Below, one piece after another: positions 44,476 to 63,624 of a stretch of 64,000 nucleotides of DNA. The DNA lies in the IMG/VR virus record IMGVR_UViG_3300037725_000018, positions 159,358 to 223,357 of that record. One strand, given 5' to 3'. The notes below the pieces were generated by a model, which did no database searches, was not told the DNA's origin, and saw only the letters and a program-made list of their open reading frames with translations. Made by a program: the position numbers and the translations under genes. How positions within the stretch are numbered: position 1 is the first letter of the stretch; every line of letters begins with the position of its first letter.

Positions 44476-44862
44476 CTACATTACACGCCGTATCCACCGG
44501 ACAGGTTTCAAAAGATTGTGTGAAACGCGGTTCCATCCGGTAAAGTGCTCTTCTTTAACGTCAACAGTCTTTTCCTTCCACTTCACGTCTCCACGTACAG
44601 AACAGATCCCGTCGTAAAGGTCTTTTGCTTCTTTTCTTCCAGACACGTTGTACTTCTTTTTGGCGTACCAGAAGTATTTTGGCGACGTAGACTGGAAAAC
44701 ATACTTTCTTTTTTGGTGAAGAAAAAGGGAGTGATATTCATAAGTGTCTGTTTCGTAAACCGCTAAGAAGTCTCCGGTTTCGCTAACGTAAAGAAAATCT
44801 TTTCTGGACCGAAGTTTCTGATCAAGCTGATTTCTTTTTCTTTTCACCACGTCTCTTTTCAT
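44476..44862 (-). CDS. Hypothetical basic protein
   Basis: 128 aa ORF. Confidence 0.6.
   Translation of the reverse strand: MKRDVVKRKRNQLDQKLRSRKDFLYVSETGDFLAVYETDTYEYHSLFLHQKRKYVFQSTSPKYFWYAKKKYNVSGRKEAKDLYDGICSVRGDVKWKEKTVDVKEEHFTGWNRVSHNLLKPVRWIRRVM
44481..44509 (-). promoter_or_regulatory. Class B ECF-like promoter (18-nt spacer)
   Basis: GAAAC-N18-GTGTAA with CAGGAAACCC leader. Confidence 0.5.
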
Positions 44863-45064
44863 TTTGTAACAATTTCTTCAAATACAATATAAGTTCGATA
44901 TCGTTTTGAAAATTTTCCGTCCATTTTCCTTCTTCTGACCCCTCTTTTGTATAATATTTAAATCTAAAAGAAGGAAACGCTTGGGTATCAAATATAATAA
45001 GGTCTTTCTTCACGACCGAAACAGAATATGGGTTTCGGAAAGCTTCTTTCGTTATAACGATCAT
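44822..45064 (-). CDS. Family A small protein (dispersed)
   Basis: 80 aa, MIVITKE. Confidence 0.7.
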   Translation of the reverse strand: MIVITKEAFRNPYSVSVVKKDLIIFDTQAFPSFRFKYYTKEGSEEGKWTENFQNDIELILYLKKLLQNEKRRGEKKKKSA

Positions 45065-45077
45065 GATACTTGCCCGT

Positions 45078-45326
45078 TCAAATGTGGTCTTTTATTTCCT
45101 TCCGGGTTCTTCGTCTTGCTCTGCTCCCCGAAGTAGAATCTTGAGTTAGCCAGTTATATATCACTAAAGATACAAAAGACGCAACGTTTTGTTCCCACTT
45201 ATATAACGTGAAAAACTTCTCTTTTTTGGTTTCTCGAAAGAGCAGGTCTTTTTCTTTGAACTCGGGGTTGTCTTCGGCATCCGGCATATATGCCGGGGGG
45301 TCTTGTCTGTTAAGAATAATCAGCAT
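45078..45326 (-). CDS. Family A small protein (dispersed)
   Basis: 82 aa, MLIILNR...RKEIKDHI. Confidence 0.7.
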   Translation of the reverse strand: MLIILNRQDPPAYMPDAEDNPEFKEKDLLFRETKKEKFFTLYKWEQNVASFVSLVIYNWLTQDSTSGSRARRRTRKEIKDHI

Positions 45327-45499
45327 AGCCTGCGTGTTGAAATTTGAAATTCAATAATCATTCTAGTTTTTCCGAAAATTGCGTGTTCTTTTAAACAGAA
45401 GATGTTTGCTTTTGTTCCTTTTAGAATATAAATCTTGTCTCCGTCTCTCAAAAAGTCGTCTTCAATCAATCTTTGATCTGTTCTCTTTACAACAGTCAT
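45320..45499 (-). CDS. Small hypothetical protein coupled to thyA stop
   Basis: 59 aa from MTVVKRTD; ATGA overlap. Confidence 0.5.
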   Translation of the reverse strand: MTVVKRTDQRLIEDDFLRDGDKIYILKGTKANIFCLKEHAIFGKTRMIIEFQISTRRLC

Positions 45500-46410
45500 A
45501 CCGCAATCGGGGCCTTGATCCAACTTCCGCTTTCGTACCCTTTTAGATTAAAATCTTCAAACTCAAAGTCGTCAATCGACGTTTGACCTTCGGAAACTTC
45601 AAGAGAGGGGAGGGAATAGCTTTTTCGGTTCATCATTTCAACGGCAGGCTCGAAGTGATTTTTATACAAATGCGCGTCCCCAATTGTATAGACAAGTTCG
45701 CCGGGAACGTGTCCGGTAAGCCGCGAAACCATGATTGTAAGAAGAGAATAGGAGGAAATGTTAAATGGAAGGCCCAAAAACGTGTCGTTGGACCGAATGT
45801 AAATCTGGCAGTCCAGCGCCCTTTTTGGAACGTCGTATGTTTGAAGAACAGACTCGTTAACGGGTTTGCTGCACGGGCCACCTAAAACCTCTTCTTCAAG
45901 TGCCGTTACCCGCTCTTGAAAAGAAAGCGTTCGGCTGTAGAATTGAAACATGATGTGGCAAGGAAATAGGTTCATGTCTTCGAGCTTCCCTGCGTTCCAA
46001 GCGGAAACGACGTGTCTTCTACTGTCCGGGTTGGAGTTGATATTGTCAATAACGTTTTGAAGCTGGTCAATGCGGTTTCCGTCCTTGTCTTCCCACTTTC
46101 TCCATTGAACGCCGTACAACGGGCCAACATTTCCATCTTCGTCTGCCCACTCGTCCCAAATTCCAACTTCGTTTTCAACAAGGTACTTGATGGATTCTTC
46201 CCCCCGAAGAAACCATATAAGCTCGTGAACTAAGCTTCGAAACTTTGTTTCTTTAACTGTAACAATTGGAAAGTTGTCTGTTGAAACCGGGAACCTCATT
46301 TGGTGGCCGAAAACCGAACGGGTTCCTGTTCCTGTTCGGTCTTCTTTGTCTGTTCCCGTTTGGATAATTTTTTGAATTAGGTCTGTATACTGCTTATCAA
46401 CAATGTTCAT
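45496..46410 (-). CDS. thyA: Thymidylate synthase
   Basis: DRTGTGT, YGVQWR, RRHVVSAWN, FPCH, YIRSNDTFLGLPFNI (Asn, dUMP type), GDAHLY. Confidence 0.95.
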   Translation of the reverse strand: MNIVDKQYTDLIQKIIQTGTDKEDRTGTGTRSVFGHQMRFPVSTDNFPIVTVKETKFRSLVHELIWFLRGEESIKYLVENEVGIWDEWADEDGNVGPLYGVQWRKWEDKDGNRIDQLQNVIDNINSNPDSRRHVVSAWNAGKLEDMNLFPCHIMFQFYSRTLSFQERVTALEEEVLGGPCSKPVNESVLQTYDVPKRALDCQIYIRSNDTFLGLPFNISSYSLLTIMVSRLTGHVPGELVYTIGDAHLYKNHFEPAVEMMNRKSYSLPSLEVSEGQTSIDDFEFEDFNLKGYESGSWIKAPIAV

Positions 46411-46597
46411 GTTTTGATATGTGTTTGATAACTTTGTTTCTTATGTTTAACTTATCTTCGATTTTTGTTTTTCCGTATTTAAACTCCGGAAATGAACGGT
46501 ATTTGTTCTTGTAGTTTACCGGGTATACCTTATCTGAAGTAGAAGCTGGCTCTTTGAAAAGCTCAAATGTAAGCGCACGTTCAAACAAAATAATCAC
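46397..46597 (-). CDS. Family A small protein (GTG start, dispersed)
   Basis: 66 aa, MIILFER...IRNKVIKHISKH. Confidence 0.7.
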   Translation of the reverse strand: MIILFERALTFELFKEPASTSDKVYPVNYKNKYRSFPEFKYGKTKIEDKLNIRNKVIKHISKHEHC

Positions 46598-46598
46598 G

Positions 46599-46751
46599 TC
46601 ACATCTTTTCCTTAACGAATGACTTGATTCTTCGCCTTTTCTTTTCGCTTCGGAAATAGTCAACGGAGTGGATGCAATCGATGGAGAAGCTATTCTTCTC
46701 AATGACGCTCCATATTCGAAGGTTTTCTGAATTTCGAGTTAAAATCACCAA
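46599..46751 (-). CDS. Family A small protein (TTG start, dispersed)
   Basis: 50 aa, MVILTRNSE...RIKSFVKEKM; read by hand. Confidence 0.55.
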   Translation of the reverse strand: MVILTRNSENLRIWSVIEKNSFSIDCIHSVDYFRSEKKRRRIKSFVKEKM

Positions 46752-46768
46752 CGTCTAACGCTTGTTTG

Positions 46769-47350
46769 CTAGAGCCTTTGAATATCAATATCTACCTTAC
46801 CGCTTAGAGTTCTCCCGTGTGCCCCGGCAGAGTGTGGCATGGTCCACCAACGGGCAAGGCTTTTGCTTTGTCTTGGAAAAGAGACGTACCTATTTTCTTT
46901 CATGTACTCGAAGATCGTTTTGTCTTCGGTCACGTCAATTTCAACAAAGAACGGCTCCCCGTTTTCTACAGTCCCAAGCTTCTTCATAAAATCTCTGTTT
47001 TGAAGCTCTTGTCGGCTTGCGGTGGAAGGGCCAAGTCCGTTTCTGTAAACATAAGCATGAACAGAGATTTTGTCTCCGTTTTTAACCGCAACAATCCGGT
47101 CGCTGTCTTCGTGGGTTGGGCTAAAAAGCTGTCCCCAACCACCGTTTTTGACTCTTTGGTAGCTAAACGGCCTCACTTCGCTAAAACCAACGAGTTTGAT
47201 GGATTCCCCGTCTTTTACGTTTTCGCCAAAGTCAACTCGAAGCTTCCAAACTTCCCGGCTTTGGAAGGTAAAGCCCACAAAGCAGTTGTAAACCGCTCGT
47301 TTCCAAAACGGGCGAACCCACGTCTTGTCTTTTGGAATATGAAATTTCAT
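46769..47350 (-). CDS. Hypothetical beta-rich protein
   Basis: 193 aa from MKFHIPK; ATGA overlap with upstream gene. Confidence 0.65.
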   Translation of the reverse strand: MKFHIPKDKTWVRPFWKRAVYNCFVGFTFQSREVWKLRVDFGENVKDGESIKLVGFSEVRPFSYQRVKNGGWGQLFSPTHEDSDRIVAVKNGDKISVHAYVYRNGLGPSTASRQELQNRDFMKKLGTVENGEPFFVEIDVTEDKTIFEYMKENRYVSFPRQSKSLARWWTMPHSAGAHGRTLSGKVDIDIQRL

Positions 47351-47667
47351 GTCAATTCTGCAAAAATTTTGAATGTGTCTGAATCTAACCTTTTGAGTCG
47401 GATTCCACACAGAACAAGCGTGGAACCTGACTGCTCGGCAAACGAATTGATCTGTTTATAAATGCAAAGAGAAATGGACTCCATAACCTTTTGGATACGC
47501 TTCTTGTCCCTTTTATACTTGTACAAAGGGATTGCGTTCCGGTCAACCTCGATTTCAAGGTCTATAAGGTCCCCGGACTTTGAATAGTCAATTGTAAAGG
47601 AAATGTCAAACTGGTCGTAGACCTCTTGCAAATGTTTTTCGATAACTTTCTCTTTTGAAGAGTTCAT
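47347..47667 (-). CDS. Hypothetical protein
   Basis: 106 aa ORF. Confidence 0.7.
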   Translation of the reverse strand: MNSSKEKVIEKHLQEVYDQFDISFTIDYSKSGDLIDLEIEVDRNAIPLYKYKRDKKRIQKVMESISLCIYKQINSFAEQSGSTLVLCGIRLKRLDSDTFKIFAELT

Positions 47668-47676
47668 CGTTTTTTG

Positions 47677-48093
47677 TTAATTCACAAGTGCGGATTTGAT
47701 TTCTTCTCTACGGTCTTCTAAGATTTCAAACCACTCTTCCTTTCGAATTTCGTTAGTTCCAAGGTAATACTCCCAATCTTCTTCATCTACCTGTTGAATA
47801 TACGCCTCGTCTGGAACAACCGTCTTTCTTCGAAGGGCCGGGACCATATCGATTTGGTGGACAAAAGAAATTTCAACGTCTCCGTCTTTTTCCTTCCGGC
47901 TTGTCCAGTTGTCCCCACAAACGATGCACGTAAAAAACGCATTTTCCTCGCTTGTGTCATATACATCTTGATCTCGAATATCCATAAACTCCCCGTTTGC
48001 TGGCCCCTCTTGGATTTGCGGAACTACGGACTTGCAGCCGCAGCATTTGCACTCGATAAACGGGGAATCGTCGGTTTCGTGTGGTTCAAACAT
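47677..48093 (-). CDS. Zinc-ribbon protein
   Basis: CKCCGC and CIVCG motifs. Confidence 0.7.
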   Translation of the reverse strand: MFEPHETDDSPFIECKCCGCKSVVPQIQEGPANGEFMDIRDQDVYDTSEENAFFTCIVCGDNWTSRKEKDGDVEISFVHQIDMVPALRRKTVVPDEAYIQQVDEEDWEYYLGTNEIRKEEWFEILEDRREEIKSALVN

Positions 48094-48104
48094 ATAAGTT
48101 TTTA

Positions 48105-48830
48105 TTAGTTTAAGGCTTTATGAATTTCTTTACGAATGAATGTTCGAAGCGATTCGTTTTTTTCGTCTTCGTCCGGGTCACTTGACGTGTATGTTGGTTC
48201 GTCGGAATCCCCGTCTTCGGAGCTTTGATCCGCGTCGTCGGATTTTACAGATTGACGTTTCTTTCTAACAAGCTCTTCTTTTTCTTCGTCAGAAAGTTTT
48301 TCTGCCTTTGATTTTGGAACGCATTTTGGGTACTCGTGTTCCGGATTGTCTTCTCTATCTTCGTCGTCGCTTGACGCTCCACACGGCGGGTGCTCTCCGT
48401 CAACGGTTCTTGAAATATCTACCCAATTTTCCTCATCGAACCAGTTATCCAAATCTTCATCTTCGTTTAACATTCGAGAAACAGACTTGAACGTGTCAAC
48501 GTCTTCTCGAATTTGATTTCGAATGAAAGTGCGAATAACGGACTCGGATTTTCTTTGGTCGCTTGGATCTGAACTTACCATGTCTGGATCTTGCTTGTTG
48601 TCGTTGTTTTTACGTCTTTTCCGGCGAACCAAACGCTCTTTTTCTTTTTTTGTCATTTGATCCGCTTTCTTTTTCGGAACGCATTTTGGATAACCTTTCT
48701 TTTCTGTGTTCTCTCCACATTCAGGGTGAGAACCGTCGTCGTTTGTCCGGGATATATCAACCCACGTTCCACCCCCTTTGCTAGAGTCAAACCACGTGTC
48801 AAGACCGTCTTTTTCGCCTAAGATTCCCAT
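48105..48830 (-). CDS. Protein with two tandem WF..W.DISR...HP.CG...YPKCVP domains (DUF5872-associated type)
   Basis: Domain repeated twice, each copy followed by an amphipathic (I/L)RTFIR helix. Confidence 0.75.
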   Translation of the reverse strand: MGILGEKDGLDTWFDSSKGGGTWVDISRTNDDGSHPECGENTEKKGYPKCVPKKKADQMTKKEKERLVRRKRRKNNDNKQDPDMVSSDPSDQRKSESVIRTFIRNQIREDVDTFKSVSRMLNEDEDLDNWFDEENWVDISRTVDGEHPPCGASSDDEDREDNPEHEYPKCVPKSKAEKLSDEEKEELVRKKRQSVKSDDADQSSEDGDSDEPTYTSSDPDEDEKNESLRTFIRKEIHKALN

Positions 48831-48835
48831 AACTG

Positions 48836-49624
48836 CTACTTGCCGATTTGCCTTTTGATTTCTTCACGGACCACCTTCCGAAGCATTTGTTCTTCAACGG
48901 TTTCCCACTCGCCCCCAAGTTCTTCGTACCTTTGAACAGCCCAACCATTAGCGTAAGCGGAATTTCCGGTAATTGTTACTGTTGACCCTTGACGCATAAC
49001 CCACGTTCCGTGTTCAGTCTGTGGGCACCAAACATCTTCTCTTCCGTCGTCTTCAATGTGCATGTTTTGTAAACCTCGGTGGCGGCGCTCTACGTCAAAA
49101 CTTGATAATTCTTCAAGGGCTTCTCCTTCAACACTTTCCGAAAGCTTCGCAGATGTTAAAAGGTTGTAGCTCGTTGGAAGCTCAGACGTTTCAATGAGCC
49201 TTCGGTCTTCAAACTTGTTTTTTCGAAAGGCAACCCACTTGTGCCCCGGAGTGCAGCGAACATCAAAACTTACCCTGTCTTTTGACATGCGCTTTATCGG
49301 AGCATCTTCGAATCTATGTTTATCTTCAACTTTGCTCCATGAAAGCACATTTTCATCTATATCATAAGCCAAAATTTCATCGCCAATTTCAATTCGGTCA
49401 TGGGCTTTCCAACCTTCGCGAGTCAAGGCTTGACTGTCAAGGGGGACGCAAGGGTAAACGTCAAATCCATCCCCGTCGTTTGGGGCCTCGACGGTTACTT
49501 CCTCCCCGTCCACAGTTCGGGACACGGAGTTTTTTTCGCCCTTGGTTACGGCAAGCACGTCTTGCCAGAGGTCTTCATCTTTTGGCCTGTTATCTGTATC
49601 TTCTGTTAAACGTCTTCTTTTCAT
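48836..49624 (-). CDS. DUF5872-like protein interrupted by a mini-intein
   Basis: Exteins join to FDVYP|SAYANGWAVQRYEELGGEW. Confidence 0.8.
   Translation of the reverse strand: MKRRRLTEDTDNRPKDEDLWQDVLAVTKGEKNSVSRTVDGEEVTVEAPNDGDGFDVYPCVPLDSQALTREGWKAHDRIEIGDEILAYDIDENVLSWSKVEDKHRFEDAPIKRMSKDRVSFDVRCTPGHKWVAFRKNKFEDRRLIETSELPTSYNLLTSAKLSESVEGEALEELSSFDVERRHRGLQNMHIEDDGREDVWCPQTEHGTWVMRQGSTVTITGNSAYANGWAVQRYEELGGEWETVEEQMLRKVVREEIKRQIGK
48962..49450 (-). mobile_element. Mini-intein (Hint domain, no homing endonuclease), 163 aa
   Basis: Starts CVPLDSQALTREGW; block B CTPGHKW; block F DVWCPQT.HGTWV; ends ITGN before Ser +1. Confidence 0.88.
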
Positions 49625-49672
49625 CTGTTTTTGTTACTAATTTATACGACATTCATGCATAACATATATATC

Positions 49673-50266
49673 TTAGTTTTGCCTGACATTCGAGTTTTCA
49701 AGCATTTTTGAAAAGTCGTCAAAACTTACCCGCTCTGCTTGGTCGTTCATGATTTTAACCTTGTCTTTGTACTCTTCTTCATGCTTTTCGATAATCGTGT
49801 GAAGGATCTGCATCCCCTGTTTCATGTACACCGTTCCGAACGCTTCCTCGCAAAGCTCGTATCGGTTTTGAAACAGGTCTTGACTTTCTTCAACAATTTC
49901 ACCCTCAAGTTCGATGTAATACGTCATTTTGTTTGATTTGGCTTTGTTTTGATAAAAGTCTCTATTTGGGTTTTTTGTTTTCATACTGTCGTATTCTTCC
50001 ATGATCCGGTCCCCCTCTTTCGGTTCAAGCATAACAATCATCTGCCCGTCCTCTTCCGGAGAAGGCCGGACTTCAACGTTGTATTTGTCTTTTACTCGTT
50101 TGATTGGTTTTCTTCGCTCTGAGTTCACAAACCGCTCGCTAGAGAACAGAGTTTTAAACACAGAAGAGGTCTTGACATTTTCATACAAATGAGCGATTTT
50201 ATCTTTCGCCCAAAAAAGGAAAGAGAAAGGAAACGCTTCTTTAAGCTTTTGTTTCGGGGTTTTCAT
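49673..50266 (-). CDS. Hypothetical protein
   Basis: 197 aa ORF. Confidence 0.7.
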   Translation of the reverse strand: MKTPKQKLKEAFPFSFLFWAKDKIAHLYENVKTSSVFKTLFSSERFVNSERRKPIKRVKDKYNVEVRPSPEEDGQMIVMLEPKEGDRIMEEYDSMKTKNPNRDFYQNKAKSNKMTYYIELEGEIVEESQDLFQNRYELCEEAFGTVYMKQGMQILHTIIEKHEEEYKDKVKIMNDQAERVSFDDFSKMLENSNVRQN

Positions 50267-50267
50267 G

Positions 50268-50603
50268 CTACTGCCGTGTGTAGTTTATAAATTCATCAAA
50301 TCTTTCGGCGTTAAACGCCTTGTCGTCAACAAATACGTCAAAAGCGGGTTTGCCCATTTTTAACTCGTCGTATTTACACCCCCACCTTTGAAGTTGGCGT
50401 TCTGTAAGGGGCCTCCAGTTTTTCCCGGTCTTTGTTCCTCTTGCGGTCCAATAAACAACGGTATGACCGTCTTCGTAGATTTGGTTGATCTTTTTGATGT
50501 TTTCCTCGATTGGAACCGCGCTTTCGTATGAATAGTCTTCAGGGCCTTCTGTTTGGCCTCTACCTTCACAAATTACGTTATCAATGTCTACATATACGTC
50601 CAT
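50268..50603 (-). CDS. HAD-family (capsule-biosynthesis-type) phosphatase
   Basis: VDIDNVIC, YWTARG, MGKPAFDVFVDDKA motifs. Confidence 0.85.
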   Translation of the reverse strand: MDVYVDIDNVICEGRGQTEGPEDYSYESAVPIEENIKKINQIYEDGHTVVYWTARGTKTGKNWRPLTERQLQRWGCKYDELKMGKPAFDVFVDDKAFNAERFDEFINYTRQ

Positions 50604-50605
50604 AT

Positions 50606-51256: not shown

Positions 51257-51259
51257 TCT

Positions 51260-51496
51260 TTAATACTGGTTTTTATGATGCTCGTTGACGGTGGGGTCTT
51301 CAAAACCAAGAGATTTCAAAGCTTTCTTCATTCGATCCGGGTCATTCAAGTCTTCGGTTCGAATCTAATCGGCATAGCCGAGCTTTTCAACACGCTCGTA
51401 ATACATGTCCCAATACCTACTAATCGCTTCAAGTTTTGAAAGATCCGTTGAAAAGTTCGGAAAGCATCGGGTGTGAAGTGATAACCGATTAGTCAT
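51260..51496 (-). pseudogene. Gene remnant with in-frame TAG, possibly a sulfotransferase-like C-terminal fragment
   Basis: MTNRL..CFPNF..EAISRYWDMYYERVEKLGYAD*IRTEDLND..LKSLGF; TAG at 51365-51367. Confidence 0.5.
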
Positions 51497-56779: not shown

Positions 56780-56825
56780 ACGTGTGTAACATTAAATTTT
56801 AGTAAGTGAATAAAGACTGGCGTTG

Positions 56826-57269
56826 CTACTCTACAACGCGGTCAATTTGATCTGTAAGACTTGTTGTGTACACAAACGATTGAATACCGGACATGTTTCG
56901 AAGATCAAATGTCCGGTACGGATTTTGCTCGAACCCAAAACTTACAATCACGCTATCGTAAAAAGACCTTGGGTTTGGAATAAAGAGGTCCAAAACCGGA
57001 AGAAAACCTTCAAGCGTGTCTGAAACGTTGTCCGGTAAAAACCCAAACGCGGTCAAGACCAAATCTAAAATCTCTTGCTCTGAAATATACTTTATATCAA
57101 TTCCGTGAAGTTTAGAATCGACGTTTTTTTCAAGCACAATCACCTTTCTAGTCTCGGTTTTTCCAGAGGATTTCAAATACTTAAACTCAATAAAGTCCCC
57201 GGACTCCACGTCTTGAAGAACCGTTGGTGATTTATCTGATATTTGATCTTCGTGGTCAAATTCTCTCAT
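56826..57269 (-). CDS. Hypothetical protein (SH3/WYL-like N-terminus, YRTF C-terminal motif)
   Basis: IEFKY..SG..ETRKVIVL...LHGID...YRTFDLRNM. Confidence 0.6.
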   Translation of the reverse strand: MREFDHEDQISDKSPTVLQDVESGDFIEFKYLKSSGKTETRKVIVLEKNVDSKLHGIDIKYISEQEILDLVLTAFGFLPDNVSDTLEGFLPVLDLFIPNPRSFYDSVIVSFGFEQNPYRTFDLRNMSGIQSFVYTTSLTDQIDRVVE

Positions 57270-57460
57270 AGCTCTTTAACACGCCTTTCAAGTTTTTTTT
57301 CAAAGCATCCCGGATATGAAAAAACAGAGTCTTGACTAGTTATTTCACAAGACTTCACGTTAAGAAGAGCCGCTCGAACCGAATCGGTTACTAAATCGGA
57401 CGCATACTTGTCATACTTTTCATTGGACTCTCTGTTGCGGTCAAAAAATATGATAACCAT
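57266..57460 (-). CDS. Family A small protein (dispersed)
   Basis: 64 aa, MVIIFFDRNRE. Confidence 0.75.
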   Translation of the reverse strand: MVIIFFDRNRESNEKYDKYASDLVTDSVRAALLNVKSCEITSQDSVFSYPGCFEKKLERRVKEL

Positions 57461-57463
57461 TTT

Positions 57464-57637
57464 TTAAAAACTGTTTGTGATTATACCCTTCACTTTTTTA
57501 GCGCCCCATGAAGGAAGGATAACCTCGTCTTCTACGGAGTCTAACAGATGATCTTCGCTATATACAAATTCAGAAGAGTAAAAGTTAACCAATCCTTCAT
57601 GGAGCTTTTCATCTTTTCTTGAAAATATGATTACCAT
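57464..57637 (-). CDS. Family A small protein (dispersed)
   Basis: 57 aa, MVIIFSRKDE...VKGIITNSF; read by hand. Confidence 0.7.
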   Translation of the reverse strand: MVIIFSRKDEKLHEGLVNFYSSEFVYSEDHLLDSVEDEVILPSWGAKKVKGIITNSF

Positions 57638-57640
57638 GTC

Positions 57641-58093
57641 CTAGCCATAAATCACTTTGCTTTTGGTTCCGTGAGTTTCGCAATGCTTTAGGGTGTTCTT
57701 GGTTCCACGGGACTTTTCATCGTCTCCACGCGCCTCTTCTGGCATAAGGGCAATAACAATTCCTCCAGCTTCGGAAACCACCTTTGCGATTTCTTCGTTT
57801 CGCTCGAAGTAATTTGTGGCCTTGTACTCCTGCCCGTAGTATTCCGGGTCATGTGCAAAGTATTCTTCATATTCGTAATGGGCCGGGGCATACTCTGTGT
57901 AGGTTACGTCTTCGAACTTCTCTTCATTTTGAAGAAGCCACTTCACCATACGGTCTACGCCTTTTGGATTCCCACCGGAAACAATTTCTAGATTTTCAGC
58001 ACCGAACTTGCTAACGGCTTTTTCAATGACTGTCCGGATCTTGTCCCATCCGTGGTCCCAACTTCTACTTCCAACAATTCCAATCTTTTTCAT
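57641..58093 (-). CDS. SLOG/YspA-like (DUF2493-type) nucleotide-binding protein
   Basis: KIGIVGSRS...IVSGG.PKGVD...RNEEI...SRGTKNT. Confidence 0.8.
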   Translation of the reverse strand: MKKIGIVGSRSWDHGWDKIRTVIEKAVSKFGAENLEIVSGGNPKGVDRMVKWLLQNEEKFEDVTYTEYAPAHYEYEEYFAHDPEYYGQEYKATNYFERNEEIAKVVSEAGGIVIALMPEEARGDDEKSRGTKNTLKHCETHGTKSKVIYG

Positions 58094-58136
58094 AATAGTA
58101 GTAATTGTAAACTGTTTTTTGATTCGTTTAATTCTT

Positions 58137-58577
58137 TCAAACTCCAAGGAAACCGTCCTCAGAGCTATTGTTTTCGCTGTTTAGTATAAACTCGTCCAAT
58201 TCAACGCCCGAAAGAACGTCTTGTTCCGAAAGAGAGATAATGCACTCGTAAGCCCCAACGCATTCTCCAACCGGGCTTTCAACGTCTTCGTCCCAAACCA
58301 TATTTTGAATTTCTTTACGGCTTGGGAGAGAAAGCCGATATCCTCCCACATCGATAGAGCTTAATCCGTCTTCTTTCTCTTTGAATTTGAAATCTCTGTC
58401 AGGGTACCGTTTTGTCAATACCCACATAATCGCATAGTCCGGGTTATGGATAAAGTCTATGTTGTTTGCGGCTCTACTTTCCGAATCTGTAAGTTCAAAG
58501 TTCCCCCGCTCAACTAAGTTTTGAAACGAAAGAGTGCTTTGATCTAGTACCGCTTGTATAAGTTCATTTGGGGTCAT
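58137..58577 (-). CDS. Acidic hypothetical protein
   Basis: 146 aa ORF. Confidence 0.7.
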   Translation of the reverse strand: MTPNELIQAVLDQSTLSFQNLVERGNFELTDSESRAANNIDFIHNPDYAIMWVLTKRYPDRDFKFKEKEDGLSSIDVGGYRLSLPSRKEIQNMVWDEDVESPVGECVGAYECIISLSEQDVLSGVELDEFILNSENNSSEDGFLGV

Positions 58578-58640
58578 TGATATATTTGCTACGTTAGTTT
58601 GTGGTTCATCTACTCATAGATATTAAAAACGTAGCCCTCT

Positions 58641-59120
58641 TTACTGTTCCAACTTGCCCCCAACCATTCTCTTTTTTACCTCTCTGTGCAAATCTTTGAA
58701 AGTGTGCCCTCTCTTTTCATACACCTTTTCTCTTTCAAATATCTTGTCTATTTTCTTGCTCAGATCACAACTTCTTTTCAACCGCACAACACTTCCATCT
58801 TTAAGTTTAACATAATACGTATCGCTAATAAAGAGTGGAAAAATGTCAAAAGACTCCGGATAAGCTACCCTTGCCACATACTTTACATTGTCGGTGCGAT
58901 AAAAATGGATCATTTTTTCCTCGGCACATACAGCGTAGTAACCATCTAAAGAAACGTAACCCGGATCTCTTGACAGCCCATAATTTTTTAGGTCTCTTTC
59001 AAGAGAATCGCATTTAGAATATGCCTTACCGTAAACTTGTAAGACAGAAACTTTTTCAAAAACGGGAATAAGAATTGCCAACAACAAAAAGTTGCCAACG
59101 AAAATTAAAAGCAGATCCAT
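58641..59120 (-). CDS. Membrane-anchored protein, paralog of 59131..59613
   Basis: N-terminal TM helix; shared LQ..G...SK, AE..I.FY..D, FP..F...Y....KD. Confidence 0.7.
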   Translation of the reverse strand: MDLLLIFVGNFLLLAILIPVFEKVSVLQVYGKAYSKCDSLERDLKNYGLSRDPGYVSLDGYYAVCAEEKMIHFYRTDNVKYVARVAYPESFDIFPLFISDTYYVKLKDGSVVRLKRSCDLSKKIDKIFEREKVYEKRGHTFKDLHREVKKRMVGGKLEQ

Positions 59121-59130
59121 TGAAATTTAC

Positions 59131-59613
59131 TTAAACGTTATCTTTTTTCCTTCGCTCGATTTCCCGCACGATTTCTGAAAACGAGAGTTCCGTATCAAGT
59201 TCACCATTTTTCGGCCTATGTGTTCCGTTAATAACCGATGAAAAATACCTGTGTAGTTCGCTAAACGGAAAAACAACTGCGCTTTTTTTGCCAAAGTCTT
59301 TTGTTAAGATCACGTAAGAGTGTGGAAAAAACATAAGTGGTGGAAAAAAGCCCCGGCGCATAGCTACACAAAGAGCCTCTTTATCCTCCCCGTAGAAGTA
59401 TATTGCATCTTCTGCAACAATATAGTCCGGGACTCCCTTTTTGCCAGATACCTCTAAGGGGCCTTTGCCATTCTCAATGTATCCCACGACCTCCGGGCGC
59501 TCATCCTTACTAAAAACAAGTCCCCCAAGAATTTGTGCCTGCAAAACCAACTCTATGAAATACAAGGCAACCACGCCTCCAACGGCAATTGAAAAAAGAA
59601 AAATCCAAATCAT
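59131..59613 (-). CDS. Membrane-anchored protein, paralog of 58641..59120
   Basis: N-terminal TM helix and shared motifs. Confidence 0.7.
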   Translation of the reverse strand: MIWIFLFSIAVGGVVALYFIELVLQAQILGGLVFSKDERPEVVGYIENGKGPLEVSGKKGVPDYIVAEDAIYFYGEDKEALCVAMRRGFFPPLMFFPHSYVILTKDFGKKSAVVFPFSELHRYFSSVINGTHRPKNGELDTELSFSEIVREIERRKKDNV

Positions 59614-59628
59614 TATTTTAATTTGAAA

Positions 59629-60141
59629 TTAAAGGGCCTGTTCTACAATTTCGTCGTGTTTCATTTCGTCGATTTTGCTTTTCTCCCCGAAAACATCCCC
59701 ACTTAGTTCTCCAGCATAGTCAAACGCACAAATTCTTCCGTCTACAACACTTTTCCCGACCTGCCTGCAATCGATGTTTTCAGCCCAAGCCGGGACCATT
59801 GATTCAAATCCTGTTTCTTTGTCCGGTTCAGAAAACGGGATCACCCGCTCCATCATAAGAACGTCAATTCCGTTCATCGAAAGCGTTCTACAGGCGGCAA
59901 GCCTATCCCGGTTCTCTGTTTGGTTTTCGTAGTTTTCTCTTTCGTCAGAGTTTTGGTGCCTTGCGGGGTAATCAATGGGAAGCTTCAAAACATAGTCAGT
60001 TCCTTCTTTAGCCCAAACTATTCTCCCCATTCCGGAGCCAATCCGAACAAACCCAAGCTCTTTAAGTCGCTTTTTACACTCCGAAACTTTTCTGTTGTAC
60101 AACTCCGCTTCGTCGCTAAATACCTCTGACACGTCGTTCAT
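59629..60141 (-). CDS. Minimal protein-kinase-like (phosphotransferase fold) protein
   Basis: RIGSGMGRIVW Gly-loop, YVLKLP Lys, N..E helix, LMMERV, D...QVG...FDY. Confidence 0.65.
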   Translation of the reverse strand: MNDVSEVFSDEAELYNRKVSECKKRLKELGFVRIGSGMGRIVWAKEGTDYVLKLPIDYPARHQNSDERENYENQTENRDRLAACRTLSMNGIDVLMMERVIPFSEPDKETGFESMVPAWAENIDCRQVGKSVVDGRICAFDYAGELSGDVFGEKSKIDEMKHDEIVEQAL

Positions 60142-60177
60142 AACAGGCTTTGGGGGTTTGACTTCAAAACTCGATAT

Positions 60178-60264
60178 TTACACGCAAAAAAGACAAAGCT
60201 TGTTCCCGGTTCACACACGCTTAATTTTTAAAACCGGGAACACACTTTTAAAAAGCCTGTTCAA
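60178..60264. promoter_or_regulatory. Divergent pair of class B promoters
   Basis: Minus: GGAAC(60202-06)-N18-GTGTAA; plus: GGAAC(60237-41)-N17-GTTCAA. Confidence 0.55.
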
Positions 60265-60307
60265 AGAGTAGAAATAAATAAGGCCCCAATGACAAAGCTT
60301 ATTAGAT

Positions 60308-60613
60308 ATGAAGCTTCTTTTTTGCCCCCATTGCGACGACATGTTCAAACTTGACAGAACTGAAACCCGCTCTTGCAAGTGCGGAAGAGTCCGGGGAAAG
60401 AAGTCTGACGGTAGCCACGCAGTTACAAACGGCTGTGGAATCCCTGTTGCTATTGACAACCGGGACTTGTTTATGGCGGCTATGAATCTTAATGAAGAAG
60501 ACTCCGGTGATATGCAATATGAAGAATTCCAGAAGAAGTATAAAATTAAAGCTTGGCTTCGGCCCCACGAAGGAAAAGGAAACCCTCGGTCTGTCGTTGA
60601 CGAAGACCTGTAG
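60308..60613 (+). CDS. Zinc-binding hypothetical phage protein
   Basis: MKLLFCPHCDD...SCKCG; only plus-strand gene in this block. Confidence 0.75.
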   Translation: MKLLFCPHCDDMFKLDRTETRSCKCGRVRGKKSDGSHAVTNGCGIPVAIDNRDLFMAAMNLNEEDSGDMQYEEFQKKYKIKAWLRPHEGKGNPRSVVDEDL

Positions 60614-60919
60614 TTAGTTGAGGGGAATCTCTTCGACCGCATTTGTTTTCTCGTTAAACCGAAGATAATACTTTCCAGCTTCCGCACCTGACTCGTAAGA
60701 CATGCAGACGTGTTTGGATATGTAAAGCTGGTGGATACTAGGATCAAAAGGGACCCAAAATATCTTTCGTTTATAGTCGCAAATCGGTGATCGATCTGAG
60801 TACGTAACAGACCAATCGTGTACGTTTCGAAAAAGGTTATACGTGCTTTTGATTCGTCGGTTTATATCAAGAGGTTCCATCATTTTCTTACTAGTCTTCA
60901 TCGATCCATTTATCATCAA
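60614..60919 (-). CDS. Hypothetical protein (start uncertain)
   Basis: 101 aa ORF. Confidence 0.55.
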   Translation of the reverse strand: MMINGSMKTSKKMMEPLDINRRIKSTYNLFRNVHDWSVTYSDRSPICDYKRKIFWVPFDPSIHQLYISKHVCMSYESGAEAGKYYLRFNEKTNAVEEIPLN

Positions 60920-61865
60920 TATATCCTTTCATTCCAGAGGGATACGAGTCGAAACGTTCTCCATCTTGATCACAAATTCCGTACTTTGAATCTCCGTTAA
61001 ACTGCTTTGAAAATGGGCAAAAGGCACACTTGAACTTTTCCGGGCGCTTTTCCATTGGCTCGGTCGTCTTTTTTCCACCCGGAAAGCCTGTCCGGAGAAA
61101 CTCGTTGAGCCAGTTGTCTACTTGTTCATGGGCCTCACTTGACGTTGGTGGAGTCCATTCGTTGATTCGGCCCGAATCCCAACGCGGGTCAACTTCTCTT
61201 TGGGCAATCCAATACGAAACGTCAACTTGCTCTTTTTTTACTCCAAGCTTGTTTGCGTAAAAGTCTCTGTATGCCAAAAGCTGGTTGACGCGCTCTGGCT
61301 CTTGTTTGTCCCACTTGTTCCAACCGCTTGTTGACGTTTTAATGTCAATGATCTTGTAAGACTCGCGGTGCTTTTCTTTTAAGATCACGTCAAGATAGCC
61401 CACAAACACAACTCCGTCTTTTACCTCTTCTTCAATGGGAACCTCAATACCAACAAGTTCAGTAAAGCTCGGATCAAAGTAATAGTCCCGGTACTTTTTG
61501 AACTCGTCAAGTATCTTTTCGGTCTTCTTGAAGTATTCAGCAAGCTCTCTAGGCGTTGTTGGGGTATCTTCGATACTTGCCCAAGGCTCATTTTCGTTCG
61601 TCTGTTTAAACGCCTCTTGAAGCTTCTCTTTAAACATTTGCTTCAAGTCAATGGCCTTAGCCTTTTCTTTTCCCTCCTCGTACAGAACTTTTAGGTAATG
61701 CTGGATTGTTTCGTGAAAAGCCGTTCCCCCGATTGTGTGAATGCTATCTGTCGGAGGTTTATGGCCTTGCACGTACCTGTACTCCCAAGACTTCGGGCAA
61801 CTCACAAACTTTTTCATTTGCGAGTAACTAATTGTGTGACTATCTGACTTTTTTGAGTTTTGCAT
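60891..61865 (-). CDS. PD-(D/E)XK nuclease, Cas4/RecB-like exonuclease
   Basis: ISYSQ....SCP..W; GTAFHETI; IE; GYLD; IIDIKT; QL.AY; CAFCP...C. Confidence 0.88.
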   Translation of the reverse strand: MQNSKKSDSHTISYSQMKKFVSCPKSWEYRYVQGHKPPTDSIHTIGGTAFHETIQHYLKVLYEEGKEKAKAIDLKQMFKEKLQEAFKQTNENEPWASIEDTPTTPRELAEYFKKTEKILDEFKKYRDYYFDPSFTELVGIEVPIEEEVKDGVVFVGYLDVILKEKHRESYKIIDIKTSTSGWNKWDKQEPERVNQLLAYRDFYANKLGVKKEQVDVSYWIAQREVDPRWDSGRINEWTPPTSSEAHEQVDNWLNEFLRTGFPGGKKTTEPMEKRPEKFKCAFCPFSKQFNGDSKYGICDQDGERFDSYPSGMKGYIDDKWIDED

Positions 61866-61892
61866 GAAGAAAGACCTTGTTTGGTTCTTTCT

Positions 61893-62111
61893 TCATATAT
61901 AGTCAGACTGTATTTTATTATGAAGTTCTTGTTTAGATTCTACTCTTAGACTAGAAGAAAATTTTTGGTAGTCGTATGCCCGAATGCCTAGCTTGCTTTT
62001 TTCTCTCCGGATGAAAAGGAGTGAAAAATTTTCATCCTTGATTAAAGAAAGAAACGGATTATCAAAGTTTGGAATACTTTGGTAATATGTGCGATCAAGA
62101 AAGATAACCAT
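61893..62111 (-). CDS. Family A small protein (dispersed)
   Basis: 72 aa, MVIFLDR...LHNKIQSDYI. Confidence 0.7.
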   Translation of the reverse strand: MVIFLDRTYYQSIPNFDNPFLSLIKDENFSLLFIRREKSKLGIRAYDYQKFSSSLRVESKQELHNKIQSDYI

Positions 62112-62117
62112 CGATCT

Positions 62118-62687
62118 TTATCGGTTATCTCCGTCTCCACGAAGAACGTTTCTTTCGCTTCTGTCAAGTAGCTTGTTTACATTTAAGCTCATAACCGTTT
62201 CTAAACTAAAGAATCCGGCATGATGAGATATATGTTTCATGGTGCTAAATATAGTCTTCAAATTTTGAGCAATGTCTTCAATCTTTTCTTCTTTTCCATC
62301 GTCACCGCGAATAATCTTTTTGATTCTTCCATTCACGCGAACAGAACTTAAAAGAAGTTGTTCGGAGTATTCTCCGATTTGTTTAATCTGCGGTCCAAGT
62401 GGGCTTCCGGAAATATCTTGATCTAACTCTTCTTGAAACTGTTCTGTGTCTATATCAAGCTCATCAATAATACGAGCAGTGTACCACATAACGTCTCCAA
62501 GCTCACCCGCAAGACTTTTCCGTTCTTTTTGGCCGTACCTTTTGTTTCTGGCTCCGGCGTATTTAGAAGCCTTTTCATGAAACTCTCCAGCTTCATCGGA
62601 AAGCCCAAGTGCAACATAAGAAATTGCTTTTTCAGATGGATAAACTGCCGTTTCTTTTGTTTTTTCGATGTACTGTTGAATATTCAT
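62118..62687 (-). CDS. MazG-like nucleotide pyrophosphohydrolase with duplicated, degenerate second half
   Basis: LGLSDEAGE...GELGDVMWY; C-terminal N..KL.DR..R.VL.G.GDNR. Confidence 0.85.
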   Translation of the reverse strand: MNIQQYIEKTKETAVYPSEKAISYVALGLSDEAGEFHEKASKYAGARNKRYGQKERKSLAGELGDVMWYTARIIDELDIDTEQFQEELDQDISGSPLGPQIKQIGEYSEQLLLSSVRVNGRIKKIIRGDDGKEEKIEDIAQNLKTIFSTMKHISHHAGFFSLETVMSLNVNKLLDRSERNVLRGDGDNR

Positions 62688-62719
62688 AACTGTATTTGTC
62701 TTATGGCTTTTGTTTGTTC

Positions 62720-63049
62720 TTAAAGGTTATCTCCGTTTTCAAACCAATGGTCATACCGAAAATCGTATCGGGTACGCTCTCTTTTTGTGGCAAATTTCGG
62801 AGGGTGTGTTTCAACCAAGTTCGGCTCCATCCACTCGATTTCAATCTCGTTGACGTTCTTTTTTAGCTTTTCAAACGCCTCTTGAAGAAGCCGATTGTTT
62901 TGCTCGATCTCCCGTCGCATAGACCCAAGACGATCCTCTCCGGTCATTTGCTTGTACTTCTTATATGCCTCTTTTAACTCTTGGTTCTTTTTGGCGTAAA
63001 ACTTACGAATTTCAGAAGGAAATTGAGAGTTTTTGATTCGCTGTTTCAT
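62720..63049 (-). CDS. Hypothetical coiled-coil protein
   Basis: 109 aa ORF. Confidence 0.65.
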   Translation of the reverse strand: MKQRIKNSQFPSEIRKFYAKKNQELKEAYKKYKQMTGEDRLGSMRREIEQNNRLLQEAFEKLKKNVNEIEIEWMEPNLVETHPPKFATKRERTRYDFRYDHWFENGDNL

Positions 63050-63055
63050 AGTCTG

Positions 63056-63424
63056 TTAATATCTTGTGTTGTTTTGTGGTTCGTTTTCTTCGGAAGAAGA
63101 AGGCGTTTGACCTTCTGTTCGTTCTTTATGTAGACTGTACATGATCTTTAGGTAGTTCAAAGCGTCTTCGAACCGCCCGTCAATCTTTTCTTCTTGATGT
63201 ATGTTGTCGCTCTTTGCATATGACATAAGGCTCGTCACATGCTTCATAAAGTAGACTGTAGCAACTAAGATCGGGTCTACGTCAAGAAAGTCCGCAATGA
63301 CCCGGAAGTTTTTATGTACGTCTTTTGCGTCCCCACTATACGCGGGGTTCTTCCTCTCTTCAGTTCTTCTTGCGTTCTTTAAAAGCTTGTTTTTTCTCTT
63401 CTGGTACTTTTTCTTTGTTGTCAT
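63056..63424 (-). CDS. Nucleotide-modification-associated domain 1-like (all-alpha NTP-PPase)
   Basis: KN.AY....DV..NF...KH......I..RF.DA.NY pattern. Confidence 0.65.
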   Translation of the reverse strand: MTTKKKYQKRKNKLLKNARRTEERKNPAYSGDAKDVHKNFRVIADFLDVDPILVATVYFMKHVTSLMSYAKSDNIHQEEKIDGRFEDALNYLKIMYSLHKERTEGQTPSSSEENEPQNNTRY

Positions 63425-63624
63425 GTCTCTTTTTCTTTCCTTAGAAATGTCTTCACAAGATGCTCTTCATCGTCGGTGGTGTAAATGGATTGCCATTTTA
63501 AGGAAACGTAAGACCCGGATCTGTTGTACCGGGTTTTCATTTCATCCCCTTCTTGGCACACAGATTTGAAAAATTCTCTATCTGGTTTATTTTCTCCCCT
63601 AGAAATGTCAAATACGAATGTCAT
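63421..63624 (-). CDS. Family A-like small protein (dispersed)
   Basis: 67 aa, MTFVFD; ATGA overlaps at both ends. Confidence 0.6.
   Translation of the reverse strand: MTFVFDISRGENKPDREFFKSVCQEGDEMKTRYNRSGSYVSLKWQSIYTTDDEEHLVKTFLRKEKET

What the first reader, a model, noticed from the sequence alone, without database searches (positions are those of the whole stretch)
44822..63624. Family A units seeded singly or in pairs between core genes
Seen: eight tagged minus-strand members sit at junctions of core genes: both sides of thyA (44822, 45078, 46397, 46599), upstream of the neuA block (57266, 57464), between nuclease and MazG (61893) and between Nmad1 and the clamp loader (63421). Several overlap neighbouring start or stop codons. 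Inference: the units behave like promoterless morons that piggy-back on existing operons, so they would be expressed in several temporal classes.
Basis: partly seen in the sequence, partly recalled or inferred. Interest (0 to 1): 0.62.

Follow-up and report, generated by a model that had tools for sequence, protein, structure and literature searches.

The report
Small tagged genes wedged between phage core genes
Eight short, fast-evolving but real genes sit between DNA-metabolism and sugar genes of an uncultured T4-like giant phage; four clearly and four weakly carry the N-terminal tag of a family of about 60 small genes that is known only from this phage lineage and has no known function.

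Summary
The eight ORFs exist at the stated coordinates and are real genes. They are conserved in place in two related strains, with dN/dS 0.12-0.29 and no stops. They share no sequence similarity with one another. "Family A" is only an N-terminal signature, M-[IV]-[IV]-[ILV]-[FILV]-E-x3-E, kept at the amino-acid level. It is found on about 60 small genes of this phage (>223 kb, T4-like, tidal-flat metagenomes), mostly in tight + strand arrays at window 250-17,400. The signature is 20-50 times denser here than in 1.9 Mb of related phage DNA, and the proteins tested have no homologue outside the lineage.

Four units are typical members (46599, 46397, 57464, 57266). Four are marginal (44822, 45078, 61893, 63421). 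All lie within -41 to +27 nt of their neighbours and have no promoter- or terminator-like site of their own, so co-transcription is plausible. One unit (57464-57637) is present in this strain but missing in two relatives. An array unit (10413-10613) is a strain-specific tandem duplicate.

The "moron-like accessory gene" reading is partly supported. "Several temporal classes" is not: no clear family member lies in a structural block (only a few small genes there) and none follows the late-promoter-like motif. Function is unknown. Both structure models were low confidence.

The parts
44822..45064 (-). Junction unit, 80 aa (MIVITKE...), weak family signature, basic C-terminal tail. Overlaps the next gene's start by 41 nt.
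   Evidence: score -3.2, p=0.06; dN/dS 0.16 against strain B; 71 aa there; divergent patch in the otherwise identical contig L164; no homologues.
45078..45326 (-). Junction unit, 82 aa (MLIILNRQD...), weak family signature, Arg/Lys-rich C-terminus.
   Evidence: p=0.025; dN/dS 0.12; 21 substitutions, 12 at third positions, no stop; only a strain variant found.
45320..45499 (-). Extra small ORF, 59 aa (MTVVKRT...), directly after thyA with a 4-nt stop/start overlap.
   Evidence: dN/dS 0.17; p=0.04.
45496..46410 (-). Thymidylate synthase (core neighbour).
   Evidence: PF00303, E=2.5e-104; dN/dS 0.04.
46397..46597 (-). Junction unit, 66 aa, GTG start (MIILFERAL...), typical family member. Overlaps the thyA start by 14 nt.
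   Evidence: ATG start in strain B contig L165; dN/dS 0.29; score 7.3, p=0.003.
46599..46751 (-). Junction unit, 50 aa, TTG start (MVILTRNSE...). Typical family signature if TTG is the start. Gene model uncertain.
   Evidence: JGI calls a 101-aa ORF instead; score 5.3 with the TTG start; -1.9 from the GTG start.
57266..57460 (-). Junction unit, 64 aa (MVIIFFDRNRE...), typical member, present in strains A and B and species C.
   Evidence: score 9.7; A-B dN/dS 0.13; A-C 52% aa identity against 91-95% for its neighbours; recombinant patch 57228-57358 in L158.
57464..57637 (-). Junction unit, 57 aa (MVIIFSRKDE...), best family score of the eight. Present only in this strain: strain B has a 65-nt spacer and species C a 15-nt spacer.
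   Evidence: score 11.3; joint 57462/57648 in three runs.
61893..62111 (-). Junction unit, 72 aa (MVIFLDR...), weak signature, between MazG and the nuclease, conserved in A, B and C. Its last codons are the late-promoter-like motif.
   Evidence: p=0.027; dN/dS 0.12; A-C 67% identity; hyper-diverged central 72 nt.
61895..61902 (-). CTATATAT motif (candidate late promoter) 30 nt upstream of the nuclease gene, inside the 3' end of unit 61893-62111.
   Evidence: 26 of 31 genome copies are intergenic, mostly 20-75 nt upstream of structural genes.
63421..63624 (-). Junction unit, 67 aa (MTFVFDISRGE...), weak signature. 4-nt overlaps with clamp loader A upstream and the 122-aa gene downstream. Conserved in A, B and C.
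   Evidence: p=0.04; dN/dS 0.13; A-C 66% identity.
43235..43435 (-).
   Evidence: score 4.3, p=0.006; dN/dS 0.39.
252..17367 (+). Main body of Family A: about 35 tightly packed small ORFs (gaps -7 to +19 nt within runs), interrupted by minus-strand gene blocks that lack the motif.
   Evidence: (28 of 33 + strand small genes pass; 2 of 16 minus-strand ones).
10413..10613 (+). Array unit that is a tandem paralogue of 10202-10396. Present in this strain, absent in strain B.
   Evidence: the alignment with L173 breaks at 10375/10595; the ORF lists are compared there.

Best explanation
The eight ORFs are real, short (50-82 aa) accessory protein genes. They are packed without signals of their own between conserved DNA-metabolism and sialic-acid-type genes of an uncultured T4-like phage of more than 223 kb. 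They are most likely co-transcribed and translationally coupled with their neighbours (inferred).

Four of them (46599, 46397, 57464, 57266) belong to a multigene family restricted to this lineage, with about 60 small genes. The other four carry only a faint version of the family signature.

The family lives mainly in tight + strand arrays. It gains and loses units, and tandem duplication is one observed route. Copies diverge so fast that only about 10 N-terminal residues stay alike: a beta-branched hydrophobic run, a Glu, then an acidic stretch. This is kept by selection on the protein. A basic C-terminal third is also shared.

Junction copies are dispersed members that became fixed at the species level. 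They evolve 2.5 to 12 times faster than their neighbours and are occasionally lost or gained.

Function (inferred only): small accessory proteins of the T4 'hyperplastic region' type, made before the late genes and acting in host takeover or anti-defence. The shared N-terminal segment would be a common structural element or a common docking handle.
For: Real genes:
- Against strain B, dN/dS is 0.12-0.29 for six units, with no stops.
- Substitutions are enriched at third codon positions in the variant patches.
- The units are called by independent gene callers.

The signature is real and specific to this phage:
- 61 of 201 small genes carry it, against 5 of 172 large genes.
- In two related giant phages only 12 of 218 and 4 of 75 small genes carry it.
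- A strict pattern occurs 15.2 times per 100 kb here, against 0.3-0.8 in 1.9 Mb of related DNA.

Protein-level constraint: codon choice inside the motif equals genome-wide usage. The same-codon fraction is 0.486 against 0.457 expected.

No similarity beyond residue 12: family-to-family alignment scores equal family-to-non-family and shuffled scores, apart from a few recent tandem pairs.

Duplication and loss:
- Unit 10413-10613 duplicates 10202-10396 and is absent in strain B.
- Unit 57464-57637 is absent in B and C, and B keeps about 19 nt of its 3' end.

No signals of their own: gaps are -41 to +27 nt. Sigma-70-like sites and terminators are at shuffle level. No Bacteroidota-type or CTATATAT motif lies upstream of any unit.

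Accessory: no homologue in relatives G001 and G002, including at the same junctions. No homologue elsewhere.

Faster evolution: A-C identity is 52-67%, against 74-95% for flanking genes (MazG is the 74%).
Against: - Four of the eight have only marginal motif scores and could be unrelated orphan genes.
- Common descent of the whole family is inferred from a 10-residue motif plus a few observed duplications. It is not shown by alignment.
- Both structure models are low confidence (pLDDT 50 and 44), so a common fold is untested.
- The timing of expression is inferred from gene neighbourhood only. No RNA run holds this phage.
- The basic C-termini may partly reflect the A-rich translation start region of the next gene.
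Confidence: 0.6

Rival explanations
1. The N-terminal segment is a targeting or processing tag rather than part of a common fold. A shared partner would read it on otherwise unrelated small effectors. Candidates are the scaffold and prohead protease, as for the T4 capsid targeting sequence, or the phage's own ClpB/ClpC-like unfoldase and DnaJ. Duplication and divergence would then diversify the cargo while the tag is held constant.
For: - Only about 10 N-terminal residues are conserved and the rest is indistinguishable from unrelated proteins.
- The constraint is at the amino-acid level.
- Among orthologues, residues 2-7 are more conserved than the rest (88% against 76%, p=0.02).
- In 23 of 55 members, positions 4-6 read hydrophobic-x-Glu, which resembles the T4 protease site L/I-x-E.
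- The phage encodes a Peptidase_S77 prohead protease, a ClpB/ClpC-like AAA+ protein and a DnaJ.
- T4 internal proteins are described as diverse proteins sharing only a capsid targeting sequence (PMC3012670).
Against: - A better capsid-targeting-type leader exists in the same genome: MI[RK]FNDLL[RK]E on 7 larger proteins, three of them in or beside the capsid gene block, including ADP-ribosyltransferase-like and zeta-toxin-like ones.
- Family A genes are not found in structural modules and do not follow the late-promoter-like motif.
- Their narrow size range (about 45-110 aa, median 66) fits one small domain better than varied cargo.
- Most of the eight lack Glu at position 6.
Confidence: 0.2
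2. The four weak units (44822, 45078, 61893, 63421) are not Family A at all. They would be independent orphan genes fixed at these junctions, whose hydrophobic N-termini resemble the motif by chance.
For: - Each has p = 0.025-0.06 against the null and scores below more than 90% of family members.
- About 5% of small genes in related phages pass the loose motif anyway.
- 63421, 61893 and 57266 are positionally fixed in A, B and C.
Against: - Eight of 25 small genes in this block pass a 6% threshold (P=7e-5), so chance alone does not explain the set.
- The weak four share the family's size, AT-richness and basic C-terminus.
- Their N-termini are nearly invariant among orthologues.
Confidence: 0.35
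3. The motif is an RNA-level feature of translation initiation in a host without Shine-Dalgarno pairing: U at the second position of codons 2-5, followed by A-rich codons. It would not be a protein feature.
For: - No gene of this phage has a Shine-Dalgarno sequence, and upstream regions are A-rich.
- All NUN codons encode hydrophobic residues, so the codon-usage test cannot exclude a periodic-U constraint.
Against: - Most genes of this phage do not carry the motif, and neither do the large structural genes, which are presumably the most highly expressed.
- Ile and Val are strongly preferred over Leu, Phe and Met at positions 2-3, and Glu is conserved at positions 6 and 10. This points to a strand followed by a helix cap.
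Confidence: 0.08
4. The junction ORFs are chance open frames in spacers, not genes.
For: They have low coding scores (5-14) and no database homologues.
Against: - dN/dS is 0.12-0.29.
- The reading frames are intact in three lineages at up to about 20% nucleotide divergence.
- Lengths are conserved.
Confidence: 0.03

Closest known systems
Small lineage-specific early ORFs of the hyperplastic regions of T4-like phages
   Same: Short orphan genes, tightly packed, lying between conserved replication and nucleotide-metabolism genes, variable between related phages and fast evolving.
   Different: About 60 of them here share one N-terminal signature and many form long tandem arrays. I know of no such shared tag for T4 early ORFs (own knowledge, not tested). 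Early timing is not shown here.
T4 internal proteins with the capsid targeting sequence (IPI, IPII, IPIII, Alt)
   Same: Diverse proteins that share only about 10 N-terminal residues (PMC3012670). The loci are variable between relatives.
   Different: Family A lies outside the head and late modules and lacks the late-promoter-like motif. The hydrophobic-x-Glu site is present in under half of the members. A separate and better matching leader family (MI[RK]FNDLL[RK]E) exists in this genome.
Morons of lambdoid phages (Hendrix and colleagues)
   Same: An extra gene between genes that are adjacent or differently filled in relatives, with a base composition different from its flanks.
   Different: No promoter or terminator of their own, a virulent T4-like phage rather than a prophage, and mostly fixed in place among close relatives.
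Tandem paralogue families of giant phages and giant viruses
   Same: Expansion by tandem duplication, with copy-number differences between strains.
   Different: Divergence is so extreme that only the N-terminus is recognisable. A profile of five paralogues and their strain-B orthologues found nothing outside the lineage among 1.84 billion representative proteins.

Membership tests
Family A (N-terminal-signature family of this phage) | N-terminal M-[IV]-[IV]-[ILV]-[FILV]-E/polar...E, scored with a 12-residue matrix trained on other members | tested here: inconclusive
   Met by 57464, 57266, 46397 and 46599 (with its TTG start). Marginal for 45078, 61893, 63421 and 44822.
Family A (N-terminal-signature family of this phage) | Small size (about 45-110 aa), basic C-terminal third, AT-rich, tight packing | tested here: met
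   The eight are 50-82 aa. By eye, several have Lys/Arg-rich C-termini; the family-wide enrichment is. Mean GC is 36.3% against 42.8% for core genes, and gaps are -41 to +27 nt.
Family A (N-terminal-signature family of this phage) | Detectable homology to other members beyond the N-terminus | tested here: not met
   None for the eight. This is also true for most array members, so it does not discriminate.
Moron | Gene absent from the same junction in related phages | tested here: met
   57464 is absent in strains B and C. All eight lack homologues in G001 and G002, whose junctions hold other ORFs or none. However, 63421, 61893 and 57266 are fixed in A, B and C.
Moron | Own promoter and terminator flanking the gene | tested here: not met
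   Consensus scans are at shuffle level and there is no space for such signals. Scans are consensus based, and the host's promoter type is unknown.
T4 capsid-targeting-sequence proteins | N-terminal leader ending in L/I-x-E, read by a gp21-type prohead protease | tested here: inconclusive
   The protease is present (PF03420). Hydrophobic-x-Glu at positions 4-6 occurs in 23 of 55 members, but among the eight only in 46397. Cleavage is not testable here.
T4 capsid-targeting-sequence proteins | Late expression or head-module context, and presence in the virion | tested here: not met
   No strong-scoring family gene lies in the structural blocks, and no CTATATAT motif lies upstream. Virion content is not testable.
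Any curated protein family (Pfam, PHROGs) | Significant profile match | tested here: not met
   Searches gave only chance-level single hits. The DUF7207/phrog_407 lead for 44822 (E=0.02-0.05) was not supported.
Homing-endonuclease-type mobile genes of T4 junctions (Seg, Mob) | GIY-YIG or HNH nuclease domain | tested here: not met
   No Pfam domain was found and the proteins are far too short.

The most novel reading that the evidence does not exclude
The MIIVFE-type N-terminus is a dedicated address tag. It would be read by one phage or host machine, for example the phage ClpB/ClpC-like unfoldase with DnaJ, or the scaffold and protease. It would mark a repertoire of about 60 rapidly diversifying small effectors for timed degradation, delivery or activation. 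This would be an early-gene counterpart of the T4 capsid targeting sequence. The junction copies would be members placed under different operons.
Probability: 0.2. Interest if true: 0.8.

Novelty: new variant of a known kind. Interest (0 to 1): 0.55.

Why it matters
Roughly one gene in six of this giant phage carries the same 6-10-residue N-terminus on an otherwise unrecognisable small protein. The family turns over between strains that co-occur in the same sediment. If the tag is a common handle, it gives one experimental grip (mutate residues 2-6, then pull down the partners) on dozens of orphan phage genes at once. It would also show how a phage builds and spreads an effector repertoire. 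If it is only the last conserved strand of a decaying fold, it is a clear natural example of how fast duplicated phage genes lose all detectable similarity. That bears on how 'orphan' genes are counted in viral metagenomes.

Tried and rejected
- DNA search of window 44000-51900 against isolated phages found only short hits in thyA and a polymerase-like piece.
- Searches for related loci with the nuclease protein found nothing in viral contigs or metagenome contigs. The thyA loci found are at most 48% identical and not syntenic.
- The subfamily alignment A2 could not be used for a locus scan because it has no conserved stretch.
- A 30-mer from the variant strain, taken from the read laying loose end, was not found in metagenome or viral contigs. 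The variant contigs were reached instead through 90%-identity cluster members.
- Structure prediction of array member 9105-9305 with 10 sequences (pLDDT 49.8) and of unit 57266-57460 (pLDDT 44.2) was too poor for fold searches, so none was run.
- ESM Atlas gave no usable lead.
- N-terminal resemblances recalled from memory were treated as leads only: CsrA (MLILTRR...), ThiS and ubiquitin (MQI...), and glutaredoxin (MxVVIYTK). No Pfam match supports any of them.
- Sigma-70-type, Bacteroidota-type (TTTG...TAnnTTTG) and T4 late (TATAAATA) promoter patterns are not enriched and do not sit at the units.
- Rfam found nothing in 44000-64000.
- No complex prediction was sent, because no specific binding claim is made.

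Full report
CONTEXT. The window is the last 64 kb of a 223,357-bp IMG/VR virus record. The phage is T4-like: Pfam finds a Gp23 capsid protein, a T4-type portal and a T4-type terminase, and a Peptidase_S77 prohead protease. Its capsid protein is 66% identical to that of an uncultured 484-kb phage, 52% to Microcystis phage Mel-JY01 and 48% to Flavobacterium 'immuto' phages. No gene has a Shine-Dalgarno sequence, and the regions upstream of start codons are A-rich. The DNA comes from tidal-flat metagenomes, and no RNA run holds it. The record is not complete. It stops inside the clamp-loader gene, and a 171-kb contig from a sister sample continues into a clamp-loader AAA+ subunit and DNA polymerase B, which are absent from the record.

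THE OBSERVATION. All eight minus-strand ORFs exist. The label 'Nmad1' for 63056-63424 got no hit. The units are packed with gaps of -41 to +27 nt. There are 4-nt stop/start overlaps on both sides of 63421-63624 and downstream of 57266-57460.

Upstream of thyA, the JGI caller annotates a single 101-aa TTG ORF. I prefer two ORFs, 46599-46751 and 46397-46597, because in a variant strain the second one begins with ATG exactly at the MIILFER motif.

WHAT 'FAMILY A' IS. The eight share no pairwise BLAST similarity. What they share is an N-terminus of four hydrophobic residues, mostly Ile or Val, followed by polar or acidic residues.
- Across the genome, 61 of 201 small genes (up to 120 aa) have this kind of start, against 5 of 172 larger genes.
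- About 35 of them lie in tight + strand runs at window 250-17,400, with gaps of -7 to +19 nt inside the runs.
- The consensus from 55 members is M-[IV]-[IV]-[ILV]-[FILV]-E-[ED]-x-x-E.
- Two complete relatives, of 263 kb and 216 kb with capsid proteins 64% and 55% identical, show only background: 12 of 218 and 4 of 75 small genes.
- A strict pattern occurs 15.2 times per 100 kb here, against 0.3-0.8 in 1.9 Mb of related phage DNA.

The signature is held at the protein level. Codon choice inside it equals genome-wide usage. Identical residues use the same codon in 48.6% of pairs, against 45.7% expected. There is therefore no conserved DNA cassette and no gene conversion.

Beyond residue 12, family-to-family alignment scores are the same as family-to-non-family and shuffled scores. 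Only a few tandem neighbours are still alignable. A second shared trait is a basic C-terminal third, which may partly reflect the A-rich start region of the next gene.

HOW WELL THE EIGHT FIT. I trained a 12-residue matrix on 55 other members and used the genes of the two relatives as the null. The scores of 57464, 57266 and 46397 (11.3, 9.7 and 7.3) were reached by at most 0.3% of the null genes, the top two by none. Unit 46599 scores 5.3 from its TTG start. Units 45078, 61893, 63421 and 44822 are marginal (p = 0.025-0.06). As a set, 8 of 25 small minus-strand genes in window 38.3-64 kb pass a 6% threshold (P = 7e-5). For comparison, 28 of 33 pass in the + strand arrays and 2 of 16 among the minus-strand genes interleaved with the arrays.

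THEY ARE REAL GENES. Contigs of the same phage population gave two further lineages. Strain B is 82-90% identical in DNA (L165, L173, L179-L182). Species C is about 78-82% identical and comes from other samples (L183, L184).
- Units 46397, 45078 and 44822 are in place in B, with dN/dS 0.29, 0.12 and 0.16.
- Units 63421, 61893 and 57266 are in place in both B and C, with A-B dN/dS 0.12-0.13.
- Their A-C protein identity is 52-67%, against 74-95% for the flanking genes, MazG being the lowest.
- Among orthologues, residues 2-7 are more conserved than the rest: 88% against 76%, p = 0.02.
- Two contigs otherwise 100% identical to the window carry sharply bounded divergent patches exactly over family units: 44975-45186 in L164, which ends at 44972 so one boundary is unseen, and 57228-57358 in L158. 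A third patch, in L163, lies in non-family genes. The L158 patch carries the same differences as the variant contigs laid, so it is recombination between co-occurring strains. The changes are enriched at third codon positions and introduce no stops.

TURNOVER. Unit 57464-57637 is present only in the window strain.
- Contigs from three runs join 57462 to 57648 with 70 other letters between.
- Strain B has a 65-nt non-coding spacer there, and species C has 15 nt.
- B still aligns to the last ~19 nt of the unit's end of that interval (window 57458-57476), which suggests loss in B. Absence in C leaves the direction of change open.
- The first 16 nt of 57464 and of its neighbour 57266 match at 15 positions, but the rest of the two units is unrelated.
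- In the array, unit 10413-10613 is a tandem paralogue of 10202-10396 and is missing in strain B.

The strains also differ by non-family insertions: a 303-aa helix-turn-helix gene, a 215-aa SocA_Panacea gene, and two 66-aa ORFs.

At greater distance the junctions are filled differently. In the 263-kb relative, the junction between clamp loader and the next conserved gene holds an unrelated 81-aa ORF, and thyA is followed by an unrelated 74-aa ORF. No unit has a homologue in that relative or in the 216-kb one.

NO RELATIVES, NO FOLD.
- Pfam and PHROGs give nothing for the eight or for 57 members scanned together.
- Word searches of 5.8 billion proteins with 44822, 45078 and array member 9105 return only strain variants.
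- A profile of five array paralogues and their strain-B orthologues (10 sequences), run against 1.84 billion representatives, returns only the lineage's own four clusters.
- The two AlphaFold2 models have mean pLDDT 49.8 and 44.2, and the ESM Atlas gives no lead.

The fold and the biochemical function are therefore unknown.

EXPRESSION SIGNALS. Sigma-70-like promoters and intrinsic terminators occur at the rate expected from shuffled sequence, and Bacteroidota-type promoters are rare. An 8-mer, CTATATAT, is strongly intergenic (26 of 31 copies). It lies 20-75 nt upstream of portal, capsid-module, tail and tail-fibre genes, and is a candidate late promoter. None precedes a family unit or an array. 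One copy forms the last codons of unit 61893-62111 and sits 30 nt upstream of the nuclease gene, and the C-terminus of this unit is conserved in A, B and C.

No strong-scoring family gene lies in the structural blocks (genome 40-80 kb, window 17.4-38.3 kb). Those blocks hold few small genes, so this absence is weak evidence. By analogy with T4, where replication and nucleotide-metabolism genes are early or middle genes (own knowledge), the neighbours suggest one broad non-late class. This remains an inference.

INTERPRETATION. The best-supported picture is a multigene family of small accessory proteins that is restricted to this lineage. It expands by tandem duplication, loses units, and diverges until only a protein-level N-terminal element remains. 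Dispersed copies are fixed between replication, nucleotide and glycan genes, where they ride on neighbouring transcription and translation.

The closest known parallel for 'only the N-terminus is shared' is the T4 capsid targeting sequence (PMC3012670). However, this genome has a separate and better candidate for that role: the leader MI[RK]FNDLL[RK]E on seven larger proteins. One of these lies directly upstream of the prohead protease, one has a weak ADP-ribosyltransferase-like hit, and one is zeta-toxin-like. A tag function for Family A cannot be excluded, and I rate it at about 0.2.

Four of the eight units may be unrelated orphan genes. I rate that at about 0.35.

LIMITS.
- The gene calls are my own crude codon-usage caller, cross-checked against JGI and Logan calls.
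- Family counts depend on how the motif is defined.
- The relatives used as the null are distant.
- The promoter scans are consensus based and the host is unknown.

Noticed in passing
window 39553-39993 (-); genome record 3464-4198, 30318-30575, 31908-32309, 71359-71829, 71826-72329, 129959-130864 (loci L041, L042, L044, L047): A second N-terminal family: seven proteins of 85-301 aa start with MI[RK][FL]NDLL[RK]E, a 10-residue leader ending in L-x-E like the T4 capsid targeting sequence. One lies directly upstream of the Peptidase_S77 prohead protease, one has a weak ADP-ribosyltransferase hit (compare T4 Alt), and one is zeta-toxin-like. They are probably packaged, injected proteins.
   Followed up: partly
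window 61895-61902, 56153-56160, 40698-40705, 38322-38329, 24568-24575 (all -), and 26 more in the record: The CTATATAT(A) motif is almost exclusively intergenic and lies 20-75 nt upstream of structural genes. It is a candidate late promoter, analogous to T4 TATAAATA.
   Followed up: partly
window 52278-56779 (-): A sialic-acid-type gene cluster in a phage: NeuB, a CMP-NeuAc-synthetase-like cytidylyltransferase, two clear GT29 sialyltransferases and one weak one, with a GT25 gene nearby. GT29 is, to my knowledge, mainly a eukaryotic family.
   Followed up: no
window 63621-64000 and contig L157:1-9424: The virus record is rated 100% complete but ends inside the clamp loader A gene. A 171-kb contig continues into a methyltransferase, split DNA polymerase B genes and a clamp-loader AAA+ subunit, none of which is in the record.
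   Followed up: yes
window 58661/58667, 60922-60957 and 44404/44407, compared with L179-L182 and L165: Strain B carries extra genes at other junctions: a 215-aa SocA_Panacea-domain gene, a 303-aa helix-turn-helix gene after the nuclease, and two tandem 66-aa ORFs (MLIDKEVE...). Contig L158 has a 20-nt deletion in ORF 58641-59120.
   Followed up: partly
genome record 142992-144959 and 154182-155000 (L048): The phage encodes a ClpB/ClpC-like double AAA+ ATPase and a full DnaJ (J domain plus C-terminal domain).
   Followed up: no
window 11572-15487 (-), repeats at 12059-12108, 12681-12730, 14515-14564: The minus-strand small genes interleaved with the arrays lack the Family A start. A repeated ~50-nt element lies at three places between them, and TACACGCA is an enriched intergenic 8-mer. 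This may be another promoter class.
   Followed up: no
genome record about 87-100 kb (L045): tRNA-like sequence words recur here (GGGTTCGA 31 times in the record, 25 of them intergenic), and family units start directly after tRNA-like 3' ends at 87,634 and 98,157. No tRNA scan was run.
   Followed up: no
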